A stretch of DNA of 63,622 nucleotides, counting the filler, from Octopus bimaculoides (Eukaryota), in NCBI RefSeq assembly GCF_001194135.2. It is 6 parts of 6 records of this genome, joined end to end, with 100 filler letters (N's around TTAATTAATTAA, not from the genome) between each part and the next. Parts side by side here need not be neighbours in the genome. Positions count along the whole stretch, not along the records: positions 27,845 to 44,410 come from NC_068982.1; 5 more parts are not named here. One strand, 5' to 3'. Of this stretch, positions 27,845 to 35,949 are shown piece after piece (the stretch's first letter is position 1; every line of letters begins with the position of its first letter). A program made the position numbers and the translations under genes. The notes under the pieces were generated by a model. It saw only the letters and a program-made list of their open reading frames with translations, was not told the DNA's origin and ran no database searches.

Positions 27845-28103
27845 TGTGTGTGTGTGTGTATATCTATGCATGTATGTATGTATGTGTGTATGTGTGTTTG
27901 TGTGTCTGTGTTTGTCCACCCACCAACGCTTGACAACCGATGGTGGCGTGTCTACGTCCCCATAACTTAGCGGTTCGGCAAAAGAGACCGATAGAATAAG
28001 TAGTAGGCTTACAAAGAATAAGTCCTGGGGTCGAGTTGTTCGACTAAAGGCGGTGTTCCAGCATGGCCGCAGACAAATGACTGAAATAAATAAGAGAATA
28101 AAT
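27845..28103 (+). mobile_element. SINE family 1 internal microsatellite, body and tail
   Basis: (TG)/(TATG) repeats then the family-1 body to aaatgactgaaataaataagagaataaa. Confidence 0.9.
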
Positions 28104-28558
28104 GAATAGTCATTACCAAATACAGCTTAATCATTAATAGAACATTTTACTGGTTTTTACTCATACGGCTGTGGTCAGGCTGGAGCGCTGCTTTTAAGGA
28201 TTTTCAGTCGATCATATCGACGTCACGTTTTGCTTTTGTCTGGTATTTATTCTAACTAATGGCCAGGTTACATTGTTCGTTGTTTTTTTTTACTAAGGGA
28301 TGCAGGTTTACACCTGTATTCTCACGTGCGCGCGCACAAACACGCACACACACACATGTATGTATGTATGGGTGTGGGTGTACTTTTACATGTGTTGTGT
28401 GTGTGTAAGTATGTGTTTGTGTGTGTAGGTAAGCGTATGTACACCGCGTCCTGGTACGTGATTAGAGGCGACTGAAAGCGTTGCCTCAGCAAATCCGTCT
28501 AACCCATGCTAGCATGGAAAAGAGGACGTAAAATAATGATGATACACACACACATATC

Positions 28559-28614
28559 GTGGCTGTGTGGTAAGAAGTTTGCTTCCAAACCACACAGTTC
28601 CAGGTTCAGTCCCA
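28559..28614 (+). mobile_element. SINE family 1 head fragment
   Basis: gtggctgtgtggtaagaagtttgcttccaaaccacacagttccaggttcagtccca. Confidence 0.75.
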
Positions 28615-28709
28615 TTATATATTTTTACGCACCATGTGCTCTGATTTTGGCGCAAAACAAAACCAGTTGCACAGTCAGAGACTAACGTGAACAATCATGG
28701 ATTTAAACT

Positions 28710-28774
28710 GGTAGTCCACACTGACGAGGCTCAAGGTTGAATAACCAAAAGCCGAAACCTGGTTTGTGGATATC
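28710..28774 (+). ncRNA. Minimal type-I hammerhead ribozyme with intact catalytic core
   Basis: TCCACA(28715-20)-CTGACGA-GGCT caa GGTT gaat AACC aaa AGCC-GAA-ACCTGGT-T-TGTGGA(28765-70). All core positions are canonical and stem I extends (GGTA/TATC past one bulged G). Stem III is pseudo-palindromic, and predicted cleavage is after 28764 (GUU). Confidence 0.8.
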
Positions 28775-29639
28775 CGTAATTGCATAATATTTTTATTTGT
28801 GCTGTTAAATGTTTTAATTCTTTCTGTTTTCCTCGCATACTGTTTTTCTCTGTTATATTTGGTGCGCTACGGTGGATTATTTAAGACTTGGCTCTTATTT
28901 CTAGCAGGTAGATGCTCATTAAGCATCATTACGCTTCGTGCAAATTTATATTTCATAGCTCCTTANNNNNNNNNNNNNNNNNNNNNNNNNNNNNNNNNNN
29001 NNNNNNNNNNNNNNNNNNNNNNNNNNNNNNNNNNNNNNNNNNNNNNNNNNNNNNNNNNNNNNNNNNNNNNNNNNNNNNNNNNNNNNNNNNNNNNNNNNNN
29101 NNNNNNNNNNNNNNNNNNNNNNNNNNNNNNNNNNNNNNNNNNNNNNNNNNNNNNNNNNNNNNNNNNNNNNNNNNNNNNNNNNNNNNNNNNNNNNNNNNNN
29201 NNNNNNNNNNNNNNNNNNNNNNNNNNNNNNNNNNNNNNNNNNNNNNNNNNNNNNNNNNNNNNNNNNNNNNNNNNNNNNNNNNNNNNNNNNNNNNNNNNNN
29301 NNNNNNNNNNNNNNNNNNNNNNNNNNNNNNNNNNNNNNNNNNNNNNNNNNNNNNNNNNNNNNNNNNNNNNNNNNNNNNNNNNNNNNNNNNNNNNNNNNNN
29401 NNNNNNNNNNNNNNNNNNNNNNNNNNNNNNNNNNNNNNNNNNNNNNNNNNNNNNNNNNNNNNNNNNNNNNNNNNNNNNNNNNNNNNNNNNNNNNNNNNNN
29501 NNNNNNNNNNNNNNNNNNNNNNNNNNNNNNNNNNNNNNNNNNNNNNNNNNNNNNNNNNNNNNNNNNNNNNNNNNNNNNNNNNNNNNNNNNNNNNNNNNNN
29601 NNNNNNNNNNNNNNNNNNNNNNNNNNNNNNNNNNNNNNN

Positions 29640-29685
<46 letters not shown>

Positions 29686-29699
29686 TTATAAATACTCGA

Positions 29700-29858
29700 G
29701 AGTCATCTTCAGTTTCCACATTCCAAATTCCACGGTTGATAATATATTGGCCAAGCCGTGGCTAATAAAAGAAAGATACTCCCCGAAGGCGACGGGTAGT
29801 GAGACCGAACCCGGGAACTCGTAGTCTCGCAGCGAAGCTCTCAACCACACAGCTAGTC
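29700..29858 (-). mobile_element. SINE family 1 head (diverged)
   Basis: Minus strand tagctgtgtggttgagagcttcgct...gttcccgggttcggtctcact...ggaaactgaaga. Confidence 0.7.
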
Positions 29859-31574: not shown

Positions 31575-31815
31575 TATGCGTATGCGAGTATCTTTGCCTG
31601 TGTTTGTCCCCCCCCACCCACTGCTTGACAACCGGTGTTGGTCTGTTTACATCCACATAACTTGGCTTTTCGACAAATGAGACCGATACAATAAGTACCA
31701 GGCTTAAAAAAATAATAGCCATTGGAGTCGATTTATTCGACACAAAATTCCTGAAGGCGGTGCCCCAGCATGGCCACAGTCCAATGAAAGAAACCATTGT
31801 AAAAGATAAAAGATA
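31575..31815 (+). mobile_element. SINE family 1 body and tail
   Basis: gcttgacaaccggtg...ataagtaccaggctt...aaggcggtgccccagcatggccacagtc. Confidence 0.85.
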
Positions 31816-33859: not shown

Positions 33860-34350
33860 TGAGCATCGTGAAAAATGCTCTGAGGTATTTGTTGTGGCCG
33901 ACTCTTCACATTCTGAGTTCAAATCCCGCCAAGGTGAACTTTGCCTCTCATCCCCCTCGGAATCGATAAAATAAAGTATTGAGAGATCAATGTAACAGAT
34001 TAATTCATAATCCTTACAATCGGTGATCTTGCTCCAAAATTTCAGACAGTTATTTTGCAGCAATTGGCAGAATCGTTAGAACGCCAGAAAAAATGCTTCA
34101 ACTCTTTACGTTCTCATTTCATATCCCGCCAAGATCAACTTTACATTTCATTCCACCGGAGTCGGTGAAGTGCCGAGGCCGATGATACTGCTGGAATCGC
34201 TCGAGCACCGGGAAAAAAAAGATGCTTTGCAATATTTACTTCAGCTCATTATGTTCTGAGTTAAAATCTCTCCTAGATTAACTTTACCTTTCGTCTCTCC
34301 GAGTTTGATAAAATATAATATCATCCAAGTACTGGTGTCGATGGTATTTC
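33860..34350 (+). mobile_element. Three diverged SINE family 2 copies in tandem
   Basis: The motif ttctgagttcaaatcccgcc..gg..aactttgcct.tcatcc...gg..tcgataaa recurs at about 33920, 34110 and 34255. Confidence 0.7.
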
Positions 34351-34451: not shown

Positions 34452-35061
34452 AATATTGGTTTCAAATTTTGGCACAAGGCTAGCAATTTCGGAGGAGGAG
34501 GTAAGTCGATTCCAGTGCTTAACTGGTATTTATGTTACCGACCCTGAAGGGATGAAAGGTAAAGTCAACCTCAGCAGAATTTGAACTCAGACTGCTAAGC
34601 ATTTCGCCCGGCGTGCTAACGATTCCGCCAGCTCACCGCCTTAATGCTGATTCAATAATATTCTTTTCTACTCTAGACACAAGGCCCGAAATTTTTGGGG
34701 GAGGTGACCAGTCGATTAGATCGACCTCAGTACCCAACTGGTACTTAATTTATCGACCACGAGAGGATAAAAGGCAAAGTCAGCCTCGGCGAAATTTGAA
34801 CTTAGAACGTAAAGACAGACGAAATACTTATTTCGTTATTGCCCACAAGGGGCTAAACATAGAGGGAACAAACAAGAACAGACGAACGGATTAAGTCGAT
34901 TACATCGACCCCAGTGCGTAACTGGTACTTAATTTATCGACCCCGAAAGGATGAAAGGCAAAGTCGACCTCGGCGGAATTTGAACTCAGAACGTAAAGAC
35001 AGACGAAATACCGCTAGGCATTTCGCCCGGCGTGCTAACGATTCTGCCAGCTCGCCGCCTT
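34452..35061 (-). mobile_element. Three SINE family 2 copies (34452-34642, 34657-34828, 34829-35061) with three different tails
   Basis: Reverse complement of family 2: gaccccgaaaggatgaaaggcaaagtcgacctcggcggaatttgaactcagaacg...gccagctcgccgcctt. Confidence 0.9.
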
Positions 35062-35949
35062 AATTCTGACACTATTAGGTTGGCAACTAAGTTCCCGCCG
35101 TTTAAAAAAAAAAAAAAAATTTTGGAATTTATTGCGTTTTTAAATTTTGGAATCTATTTTTTTCGAGAATTCTATTTTTGACTCATTTTGGAATCTATTT
35201 TGTTTTTTTATCTTTCATCCTTTCAGGTTCGATAACATAAGCACCAGGTGAACACTGGGGTCGGTGTAGTCGACTTAATTACTCCTGGGTAAGAGTATAA
35301 ACAAACTGCAGCCTTTTGCCAAGCTACGTCGAGCCAGTGTAGCAGAGAAGAGTCATCAGACCAGTATGGTCTCAAGCTCGAATTCAAGGCCTCCACATCA
35401 GACCGTGGTTGGTGGAGCGAACATGCTGGAGCCTTCGTCTTGCAGTGGACTGAATAGAGGCAAACCAATTAAAACAAGGTATTGTTAAAAGAAAAGAAAA
35501 TATGATAAATAACTGACTAGGTTGGTTTACAGCACTCCATGTCTTTGTCTCCCTGCTTTTGCTTGTAATCCACCGCCTTCATCAATCATAATTATGGCTT
35601 CTGATTTAGACATAAGGTTCGTGCCGTCTTAAGGCATAACCACACTAGGCAGTTGCTGGGAGGCCTCATGGGTTAAGGGGCCCGATTCTGATCTATGCAT
35701 ACAGAGGCTTGTTGTCAGTAGATAAAGATAGTGGTGCTTTGATTTTCGCAGGGACCTGTAATGCGGTTAAGCTGGACCGGCCATCGAAGCCAACTTTGCG
35801 TTTCATCTTTTCAGAGTTGAATAAAATAAAGAACCAGTCAAGTACTGGGGTCAGTTACTGGTTTTGTACCTAAATTAGAAACAACTTAGTTCTGGATTGA
35901 ATGAGAAAATACCTTTCAACATATTTTACACTTCTTACTCTACCATCCA

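What the first reader, a model, noticed from the sequence alone, without database searches (positions are those of the whole stretch)
28710..28774. Apparently intact hammerhead ribozyme 2.6 kb downstream of the GPCR stop, same strand
Seen: all 13 core positions are canonical. Stem I is 6 bp, extendable to 10 with one bulge. Stem II is two-part (GGCU/AGCC plus GGUU/AACC), stem III is the pseudo-palindrome ACCUGGU, and the cleavage triplet is GUU. It interrupts a SINE head and is followed 200 nt later by a gap of about 670 nt that could hide a partner copy. Inference: if the GPCR 3' UTR or read-through transcript reaches it, self-cleavage could define or destabilise the transcript end.
Basis: partly seen in the sequence, partly recalled or inferred. 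Interest (0 to 1): 0.75.

Follow-up and report, generated by a model that had tools for sequence, protein, structure and literature searches.

The report
Lone hammerhead ribozyme motif, octopus repeats
The sequence fits the self-cleaving hammerhead ribozyme pattern exactly and is most likely a stray copy left by a mobile element of a well-known animal type, with nothing here showing that it controls the neighbouring gene.

Summary
At 28714-28771 (+), or 28710-28774 with the extended stem I, every conserved hammerhead core base is canonical. Stem I is 7 bp (10 with one bulge). Stem II is 4+4 bp. Helix III is the near-palindrome ACCUGGU, and cleavage would follow U28764. A strict descriptor finds about 2.5e-9 hits per random base, so about 7e-5 are expected in this piece.

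It is the only copy in the piece and in 20 kb of Octopus vulgaris DNA. Rfam does not call it: 17.7 bits against a cut-off of 48.5. Thermodynamic folding puts about 95% of the monomer in an inactive pairing. A two-copy "double hammerhead" fold is much better.

This design is the published one for Penelope-like elements and non-LTR retrozymes in animals. I read it as a solitary retroelement-derived hammerhead next to a truncated tRNA-type SINE head. No reverse transcriptase, tandem partner or family copy could be shown, and the 674-N gap stays open. The GPCR-regulation idea is untested and unlikely. Verdict: new member of a known kind, modest interest.

The parts
28710..28774 (+). Whole type I hammerhead motif including the extended stem I (10 bp with A28713 bulged)
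   Evidence: Read directly. My own descriptor gives a single hit in the piece. The single-sequence covariance model finds no second copy.
28714..28720 (+). Stem I, 5' strand (GUCCACA)
   Evidence: Pairs with 28765-28771. Pairing probability is 0.7-1.0 in the thermodynamic ensemble.
28721..28727 (+). Core CUGACGA (C3 U4 G5 A6 N7 G8 A9)
   Evidence: Exact match to CUGANGA.
28728..28753 (+). Stem II: GGCU/AGCC, internal loop CAA/AAA, GGUU/AACC, loop GAAU
   Evidence: The nearest-neighbour model gives this helix a probability of only about 0.06 in the monomer.
28754..28757 (+). Core GAAA (G12 A13 A14 A15.1)
28757..28763 (+). Helix III, near-palindrome ACCUGGU. In cis it forms 2 bp plus a 3-nt loop. 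Between two copies it forms 6 bp around a U.U mismatch.
   Evidence: The same helix III occurs in an unrelated hammerhead in L065.
28764..28765 (+). Predicted cleavage site: after U17 (28764), before U1.1 (28765). Triplet GUU.
   Evidence: Position follows from the hammerhead numbering applied to the sequence. No cleavage was tested.
28765..28771 (+). Stem I, 3' strand (UGUGGAU)
28558..28614 (+). Truncated head of a tRNA-derived SINE (A-box-like and B-box-like parts). Homology to all other copies ends at 28614. A T5 run follows at 28622-28626.
   Evidence: ARAGORN calls no tRNA.
28615..28965 (+). AT-rich sequence (37% G+C) that carries the hammerhead. It is unrelated to the SINE body, has no other copy in the sequence at hand, and is cut off by the assembly gap.
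   Evidence: No Pfam domain in six frames of 28100-28965. No protein-level relatives.
28966..29639 (.). Assembly gap (674 N), followed by (AC)22. Its content is unknown.

Best explanation
This is a genuine hammerhead-derived sequence of the animal retroelement type: type I topology, and a very short palindromic helix III that needs a second copy to form a stable active fold. It was most likely deposited by a Penelope-like element terminal repeat or by its non-autonomous derivative, a non-LTR retrozyme. It now sits as a solitary copy beside a truncated SINE head in a repeat-rich, non-coding stretch of an Octopus genome.

In its parent element the ribozyme would cut multimeric transcripts into units, by pairing two ACCUGGU segments into one helix III with swapped stem I strands. 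As a lone copy it is expected to cleave poorly or not at all, and to have no dedicated host function.

Shown: the motif, its improbability by chance, its single-copy state in the sequence at hand, the SINE break, and the folding energies.
Inferred: the retroelement origin, dependence on a dimer, and lack of host function.
For: - The core is exact and all three helices are present.
- About 7e-5 chance hits are expected in this piece.
- Several features not required by my descriptor match those listed as hallmarks of animal PLE and retrozyme hammerheads. These are G10.1-C11.1, C15.2-G16.2, a palindromic helix III, a 6-7 bp helix I and a long helix II (PMC4209133; PMC6765202, section on retrotransposons; PMC7229834).
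- The double-hammerhead fold scores -38.5 kcal/mol, against -25.6 for two monomer hammerhead folds.
- The flank has 37% G+C, as reported for animal retrozymes (PMC7229834).
- Hammerhead_1 hits and Penelope elements have been reported in a cephalopod genome (PMC6962438).
- Dispersed monomer copies are common for such families (bioRxiv 10.64898/2026.07.22.740005).
- An unrelated metagenome contig holds a real-looking minimal hammerhead with the identical GAAACCUGGUU segment. It has stem I of 5 bp and stem II of 6 bp and is the one structured hit among about 120 pattern hits.
- The organism is an Octopus: the SINE ORF matches an O. vulgaris protein, and the same SINE head occurs at least five times in 20 kb of O. 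vulgaris DNA.
Against: - No second copy of the hammerhead or of its 350-nt flank was found in the piece or in 20 kb of O. vulgaris DNA. Family membership and covariation are therefore untested.
- There is no reverse transcriptase or GIY-YIG remnant next to it.
- No tandem repeat is visible, and none with a unit under about 350 nt is possible.
- Rfam scores it far below its thresholds.
- It lacks the unpaired base between positions 9 and 10.1 that is described for minimal PLE hammerheads, and its stem I is longer than theirs (PMC4209133).
- A genome of a few Gb would hold about 10 chance matches to my descriptor.
Confidence: 0.62

Rival explanations
1. Active tandem retrozyme locus. The visible copy is the first unit of a head-to-tail array whose next unit or units lie in the 674-N gap. 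Transcripts would then carry two hammerheads that cleave as a dimer and release a unit that can be circularised.
For: Helix III needs a partner. The gap starts 201 nt after the cleavage site. A unit of 350 nt or more would place the next hammerhead inside the gap, and published unit sizes are 170-400 nt, or up to 972 nt (PMC7229834; bioRxiv 10.64898/2026.07.22.740005). Tandem repeats often break short-read assemblies.
Against: Nothing upstream of the motif repeats downstream within the 191 nt that can be read. Gaps are frequent in this piece (seven gaps, 18% N), and this one borders an (AC)22 microsatellite, which explains it just as well.
Confidence: 0.13
2. Chance match. Ordinary AT-rich intergenic sequence happens to satisfy the hammerhead consensus and was never part of a ribozyme-bearing element.
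For: About 10 chance hits per genome of a few Gb are expected for the base descriptor. No relatives were found. It falls below Rfam thresholds. The thermodynamic ensemble prefers a non-hammerhead fold.
Against: It exceeds the descriptor on several independent counts: stem I of 7-10 bp, a second 4-bp helix in stem II, G10.1-C11.1 and a palindromic helix III. Only 7e-5 are expected in this piece. Animal genomes commonly hold hundreds to thousands of real motifs of this design (PMC4209133, PMC6962438).
Confidence: 0.12
3. Composite SINE of the schistosome Sm-alpha kind. The tRNA-like head supplies a polymerase III promoter, and the hammerhead 100 nt downstream belongs to the same mobile unit.
For: The head and the hammerhead lie on the same strand, 100 nt apart. 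SINE-like elements made of a pol III promoter plus a hammerhead are known in Schistosoma (PMC6765202).
Against: Homology to the common SINE stops abruptly at 28614 and the following sequence is unrelated to the SINE body. A T5 run at 28622-28626 and a T4 run at 28645 would stop polymerase III before it reaches the ribozyme. All eight other heads examined continue into the ordinary body.
Confidence: 0.07
4. Host-recruited ribozyme that cuts the 3' UTR or a read-through transcript of the upstream gene and so sets or destabilises its 3' end.
For: A precedent exists in the Clec2 3' UTR hammerhead of rodents (PMC6765202). Retrozyme copies that overlap exons tend to lie in 3' UTRs in Xenopus (bioRxiv 10.64898/2026.07.22.740005).
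Against: The gene is outside the sequence I could read. AATAAA hexamers at 28085 and 28097 precede the motif. The monomer is predicted to be mostly misfolded, and the context is a junkyard of repeats. No conservation data are available.
Confidence: 0.04

Closest known systems
Hammerheads of Penelope-like element terminal repeats (Cervera and de la Pena 2014, PMC4209133; reviewed in PMC6765202)
   Same: Type I topology, exact core, G10.1-C11.1, a long helix II, a very short palindromic helix III that implies action as a dimer, and frequent occurrence as scattered single motifs from truncated elements.
   Different: No flanking reverse transcriptase/endonuclease reading frame or terminal repeat is visible. 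Stem I is longer (7-10 bp against 4-5). There is no unpaired base between positions 9 and 10.1. Helix III has 7 nt rather than the bare minimal core.
Non-LTR retrozymes of animals (Cervera and de la Pena 2020, PMC7229834; Li et al. 2026 preprint, 10.64898/2026.07.22.740005)
   Same: Type I hammerhead with stem I of about 6 bp and a first stem II segment of 4 bp, weak helix III, low G+C in the surrounding sequence, non-coding, and dispersed monomer copies known.
   Different: No tandem repeat can be seen here. Stem II carries an extra hairpin where canonical motifs have a simple loop 2. No conserved loop-loop contact bases can be recognised.
Sm-alpha / Sj-alpha SINE-like elements of Schistosoma (described in PMC6765202)
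   Same: A tRNA-like polymerase III promoter region and a type I hammerhead on one strand within about 150 nt.
   Different: Here the SINE head is a broken copy of a common SINE that normally has no ribozyme. Runs of T separate it from the hammerhead.
Clec2 3' UTR hammerhead of rodents and intronic HH9/HH10 of amniotes (PMC6765202)
   Different: Those are conserved among orthologues, and the Clec2 hammerhead is split by several hundred nt. Here there is no evidence of conservation or of inclusion in an mRNA.

Membership tests
Hammerhead ribozyme, type I | Conserved core: CUGANGA, GAAA, A15.1-U16.1, H17 not G | tested here: met
   CUGACGA 28721-28727, GAAA 28754-28757, A28757-U28763, U28764.
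Hammerhead ribozyme, type I | Three helices around the core, with stem I open and stems II and III closed | tested here: met
   Stem I is 7 bp (10 with a bulge) and stem II is 4+4 bp. Helix III in cis is only 2 bp plus a 3-nt loop.
Hammerhead ribozyme, type I | Score at or above Rfam's gathering threshold for a hammerhead family | tested here: not met
   No hit at gathering scores. The best is Hammerhead_3 at 17.7 bits against 48.5, E 0.62, using an unworkable type III reading. Published retroelement-type hammerheads are found with descriptors rather than with Rfam models, and the L065 example also gets no Rfam hit.
Hammerhead ribozyme, type I | Compensatory changes in the stems among related copies | not testable with these tools
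   No related copy could be retrieved. Full Octopus genomes are not searchable by DNA here.
Hammerhead ribozyme, type I | Self-cleavage at the predicted site | not testable with these tools
   Needs an experiment. The thermodynamic model gives the active stem II a probability of about 0.06 in the monomer.
Penelope-like element hammerhead | Lies in a terminal repeat flanking an RT / GIY-YIG reading frame | tested here: not met
   No Pfam domain in six frames of 28100-28965. The open frames of 60 codons or more in the piece look like translated repeats by eye; they were not searched. A 5'-truncated copy, or an element hidden in the gap, is not excluded.
Penelope-like element hammerhead | Very short palindromic helix III, so the motif works as a dimer | tested here: met
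   ACCUGGU. The double-hammerhead fold scores -38.5 kcal/mol against -25.6 for two monomer folds.
Penelope-like element hammerhead | Long helix II, short helix I (4-5 bp), extra base between positions 9 and 10.1 | tested here: inconclusive
   Helix II is long (8 bp in two segments). Helix I is 7-10 bp and there is no extra base (PMC4209133).
Non-LTR retrozyme | Head-to-tail repeats of about 170-400 bp, each with a type I hammerhead | tested here: inconclusive
   There is no repeat in the readable 352 nt, so any unit must be about 350 nt or longer. The next 674 nt are N.
Non-LTR retrozyme | Low G+C, non-coding unit | tested here: met
   37% G+C. No protein signal.
Sm-alpha-like SINE with hammerhead | Polymerase III promoter and hammerhead form one repeated unit | tested here: not met
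   All eight other copies of the head continue into the ordinary SINE body. T runs at 28622 and 28645 lie between head and ribozyme. No second composite copy was found.
Regulatory 3' UTR hammerhead (Clec2 type) | Lies within the mature transcript between the stop codon and the poly(A) site, and is conserved among orthologues | not testable with these tools
   The gene is outside the piece, and no transcript data or orthologous loci are available.

The most novel reading that the evidence does not exclude
Octopus genomes hold a so far undescribed hammerhead-bearing mobile family. It would be either a tRNA-head/hammerhead composite SINE or a retrozyme with an unusual two-part stem II. This copy would lie within the transcription unit of the upstream receptor gene, where cleavage as a dimer with a partner hidden in the gap truncates read-through transcripts.
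Probability: 0.05. Interest if true: 0.55.

Novelty: new member of a known kind. Interest (0 to 1): 0.25.

Why it matters
If it is real, it adds a cephalopod example to the well-documented spread of retroelement hammerheads in animals. Its stem II is somewhat unusual, being extended by a hairpin, and its helix III is a 7-nt near-palindrome.

This would matter more in two cases. The first is a family of such copies in Octopus that is expressed as circular RNA. The second is conservation of this copy at the orthologous position next to the receptor gene. Neither is shown here. On present evidence it is an ordinary by-product of mobile-element activity.

Tried and rejected
1. **Hammerhead arose from the SINE body.** From memory the segment resembled the SINE stretch GGATTTGGTAGACGGAAACTGAA. 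Rejected: the local alignment scores 11, against 9.7 +/- 1.7 for shuffles, and 113 of 500 shuffles reach it.
2. **Rfam's type III reading (28706-28763).** Rejected: only 7 nt lie between the would-be cleavage site and CUGA, so no helix I hairpin can form, and helix III would have two mismatches.
3. **Finding other copies through protein databases.**
   - A 63-aa reverse-frame peptide across the ribozyme found nothing.
   - A six-frame composite of 28613-28965 found nothing.
   - Exact look-ups of two window ORFs found nothing.
4. **Metagenome scan for the specific stem II plus helix III.** No hits.
5. **Metagenome scan for the core plus helix III only.** It returned at least 120 hits. All but one show the stem statistics of chance.
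6. **Covariance model of the motif over the piece, L001 and L002.** Only the query itself was found.
7. **Search of papers for the sequence strings.** Only unrelated primer matches came up.
8. **tRNA scan.** No gene was called.
9. **The Lunse et al. 2017 paper on dimeric PLE hammerheads.** It is not held in the library.

Full report
**The observation.** The sequence at 28710-28774 (+) reads GGUAGUCCACA CUGACGA GGCUCAAGGUUGAAUAACCAAAAGCC GAAA CCUGGU U UGUGGAUAUC. A descriptor I wrote finds exactly one type I hammerhead in the piece on either strand, at 28714-28771. It requires CUGANGA, a stem II closed before GAAA, A15.1-U16.1, H17 not G, and a stem I formed by the flanks. The anatomy is as follows.

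- Stem I is GUCCACA/UGUGGAU, 7 bp including one G.U. With A28713 bulged, three more pairs extend it to 28710/28774.
- Stem II is GGCU/AGCC, then a symmetric 3x3 internal loop, then GGUU/AACC closed by GAAU.
- Helix III is the 7-nt near-palindrome ACCUGGU.
- The cleavage triplet is GUU, with the scissile bond after U28764.

The gap is 28966-29639, 674 N.

**Chance.** I scanned random sequence of matched composition with a strict version of the descriptor: stem I >=6, stem II >=4, and helix III >=2 within 12 nt.

- It gave 0 hits in 40 Mb of first-order Markov sequence.
- It gave 2 hits in 800 Mb of independent-base sequence, about 2.5e-9 per base.
- That is about 7e-5 expected in the 27 kb (both strands) of readable sequence here.
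- It is also about ten in a genome of a few Gb, so the descriptor alone does not prove descent from a ribozyme.

The motif goes beyond the descriptor in several ways that published work lists as hallmarks of real animal hammerheads. These are the G10.1-C11.1 pair, the palindromic positions around 15.2-16.2, the 6-7 bp stem I and the long helix II (PMC4209133).

**Curated models.** Rfam reports nothing in the piece at gathering thresholds. With permissive settings the only hammerhead hit is Hammerhead_3, at 17.7 bits against a cut-off of 48.5, E 0.62. That alignment uses AACUGGU (28706-28712) as a helix III strand and leaves only 7 nt for helix I, which cannot work, so I reject it. Failure at Rfam thresholds counts against a textbook hammerhead. 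It is expected for the short-helix-III retroelement variants, which the literature finds with structure descriptors (PMC4209133, PMC8557442).

**Folding.**

- In cis, helix III can form only A-U and C-G around a 3-nt loop.
- The hammerhead fold of the 65-mer evaluates to -12.8 kcal/mol, or -15.6 without helix III. The minimum free energy fold is -19.8.
- In the ensemble, stem I forms with probability 0.7-1.0. The hammerhead stem II forms at only about 0.06.
- An alternative pairing of GACGAGG (28723-28729) with CCUGGUU (28758-28764) forms at about 0.95. The picture is the same in 171-nt and 352-nt contexts.
- Two copies can pair their ACCUGGU segments (6 bp around a U.U mismatch) and swap stem I strands. 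This is the classical double hammerhead. It evaluates to -38.5 kcal/mol, against -25.6 for two monomer hammerhead folds, -39.6 for two monomer optimum folds and -42.9 for the two-strand optimum.

The nearest-neighbour model ignores the tertiary structure of the core, so this evidence is indicative only. It agrees with the published behaviour of this class: little or no cleavage as monomers, and cleavage as dimers (PMC4209133, PMC6765202, PMC7229834).

**Surroundings.** The piece is 38.6% G+C and 18% N, and it is full of microsatellites and SINE copies.

- The only open frames of 60 codons or more read as translated microsatellite or SINE sequence (judged by eye, not searched).
- The six frames of 28100-28965 match no Pfam family at E<=1.
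- 28558-28614 is the head of a tRNA-derived SINE. It matches other copies in the piece (29972, 41209) and at least five copies in 20 kb of Octopus vulgaris DNA.
- In all eight other heads aligned, the sequence continues CTGCGTGGCACC..., whereas here it diverges after 28614.
- The following 352 nt (37% G+C) show no similarity to the SINE body.
- The missing part of the SINE is not seen after the gap. There, an (AC)22 run and a different, minus-strand SINE follow.
- So the hammerhead abuts a broken SINE head rather than sitting within it.
- Runs of T at 28622-28626 and 28645-28648 lie between the head and the ribozyme. Polymerase III transcripts from that head would probably stop short of it.

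**Organism.** A peptide translated from the SINE tail matches a hypothetical protein of Octopus vulgaris. Its locus, L001 (OX597840.1), carries the same SINE repeatedly. The window therefore comes from an Octopus genome or a very close relative.

**Search for relatives.**

- No second copy of the hammerhead or of 28615-28965 exists in the piece, in L001 or in L002. This holds for blastn and for a covariance model run without filters.
- Protein-space searches across all six frames found nothing. Exact look-ups of two ORFs found nothing.
- A metagenome scan for the specific stem II plus helix III found nothing.
- A looser scan, for the core plus CGAAACCUGGUH, returned at least 120 hits whose stem statistics are those of chance.
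- The one exception is contig JAAUYA010069340.1 (L065, 1168-1216). It has a 5-bp stem I, a 6-bp stem II and the identical GAAACCUGGUU segment. I estimate the joint chance of such stems among 120 hits at about 0.007.
- So this helix III variant recurs in at least one other real-looking minimal hammerhead, which Rfam also misses.

**Interpretation.** The design is the one described for hammerheads of Penelope-like element terminal repeats and of the non-LTR retrozymes derived from them: type I, with a palindromic and very short helix III and a long helix II. Both occur massively in invertebrates, often as scattered single motifs from truncated copies (PMC4209133, PMC7229834, PMC6765202, 10.64898/2026.07.22.740005). 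A giant squid genome paper reports 235 Hammerhead_1 hits and Penelope elements (PMC6962438), so such motifs are already on record in cephalopods.

I conclude that this is most likely a solitary retroelement-derived hammerhead. In the parent element it would process multimeric transcripts as a dimer. Here it probably does nothing for the host.

It does not meet two defining features that I could test: a flanking RT/endonuclease frame, and a visible tandem repeat. So I do not file it as a proven member of either element family. It works like them. Membership awaits a genome-wide search.

Cutting the upstream receptor transcript cannot be tested with the sequence given. The following count against it:

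- the repeat-junk context;
- two AATAAA hexamers upstream on the same strand;
- the predicted misfolding of the monomer;
- the lack of any conservation evidence.

A partner copy in the gap is possible only if the unit is about 350 nt or longer. The gap also borders a microsatellite, as other gaps in this piece do, so it carries no special weight.

**Verdict.** The motif belongs to a known kind, and the regulatory reading is unsupported. Interest is modest.

Noticed in passing
window 33901-34315 and 34495-35070; also 38298-38415 and 41729-41810: A second tRNA-like repeat family occurs as three units in one orientation, followed about 200 nt later by three units in the opposite orientation (arms 70-86% complementary). 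Such a cluster could fold back on itself if transcribed.
   Followed up: partly
window 29685-29845 (-), with 29640-29684: A different SINE-like element lies on the minus strand. Its tRNA-like head is around 29790-29845 and its (TG)n tail forms the (AC)22 run that borders the assembly gap.
   Followed up: no
window 28705-28714 versus 28754-28766: AAACTGGTAG just upstream of stem I resembles GAAACCTGGTTTG at helix III and the cleavage site. It could be a vestige of a unit junction or a coincidence. It is what produced Rfam's weak type III alignment.
   Followed up: partly
L065 (JAAUYA010069340.1) 1168-1216: A minimal type I hammerhead with the same helix III and GUU triplet (stem I 5 bp, stem II 6 bp) sits in an AT-rich, eukaryote-like metagenome contig that may hold exons on the opposite strand. 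Rfam gives no hit at E<=1.
   Followed up: partly
window 27845-28100, 31611-31793, 41259-41346, 42258-42458; L001 several places; L002: Tails and heads of one abundant tRNA-derived SINE are shared with Octopus vulgaris at 80-90% identity. An ENA metagenome assembly (ERZ15185476) also contains this octopus SINE, which points to host DNA in that sample.
   Followed up: partly
window 28440-28543: The tail of yet another repeat (…CCATGCTAGCATGGAAAAGAGGACGTAAAATAATGATGAT) ends just before the short (AC)n run and the truncated SINE head. Copies occur in reverse orientation in L001 (1591-1638, 6897-6945).
   Followed up: no
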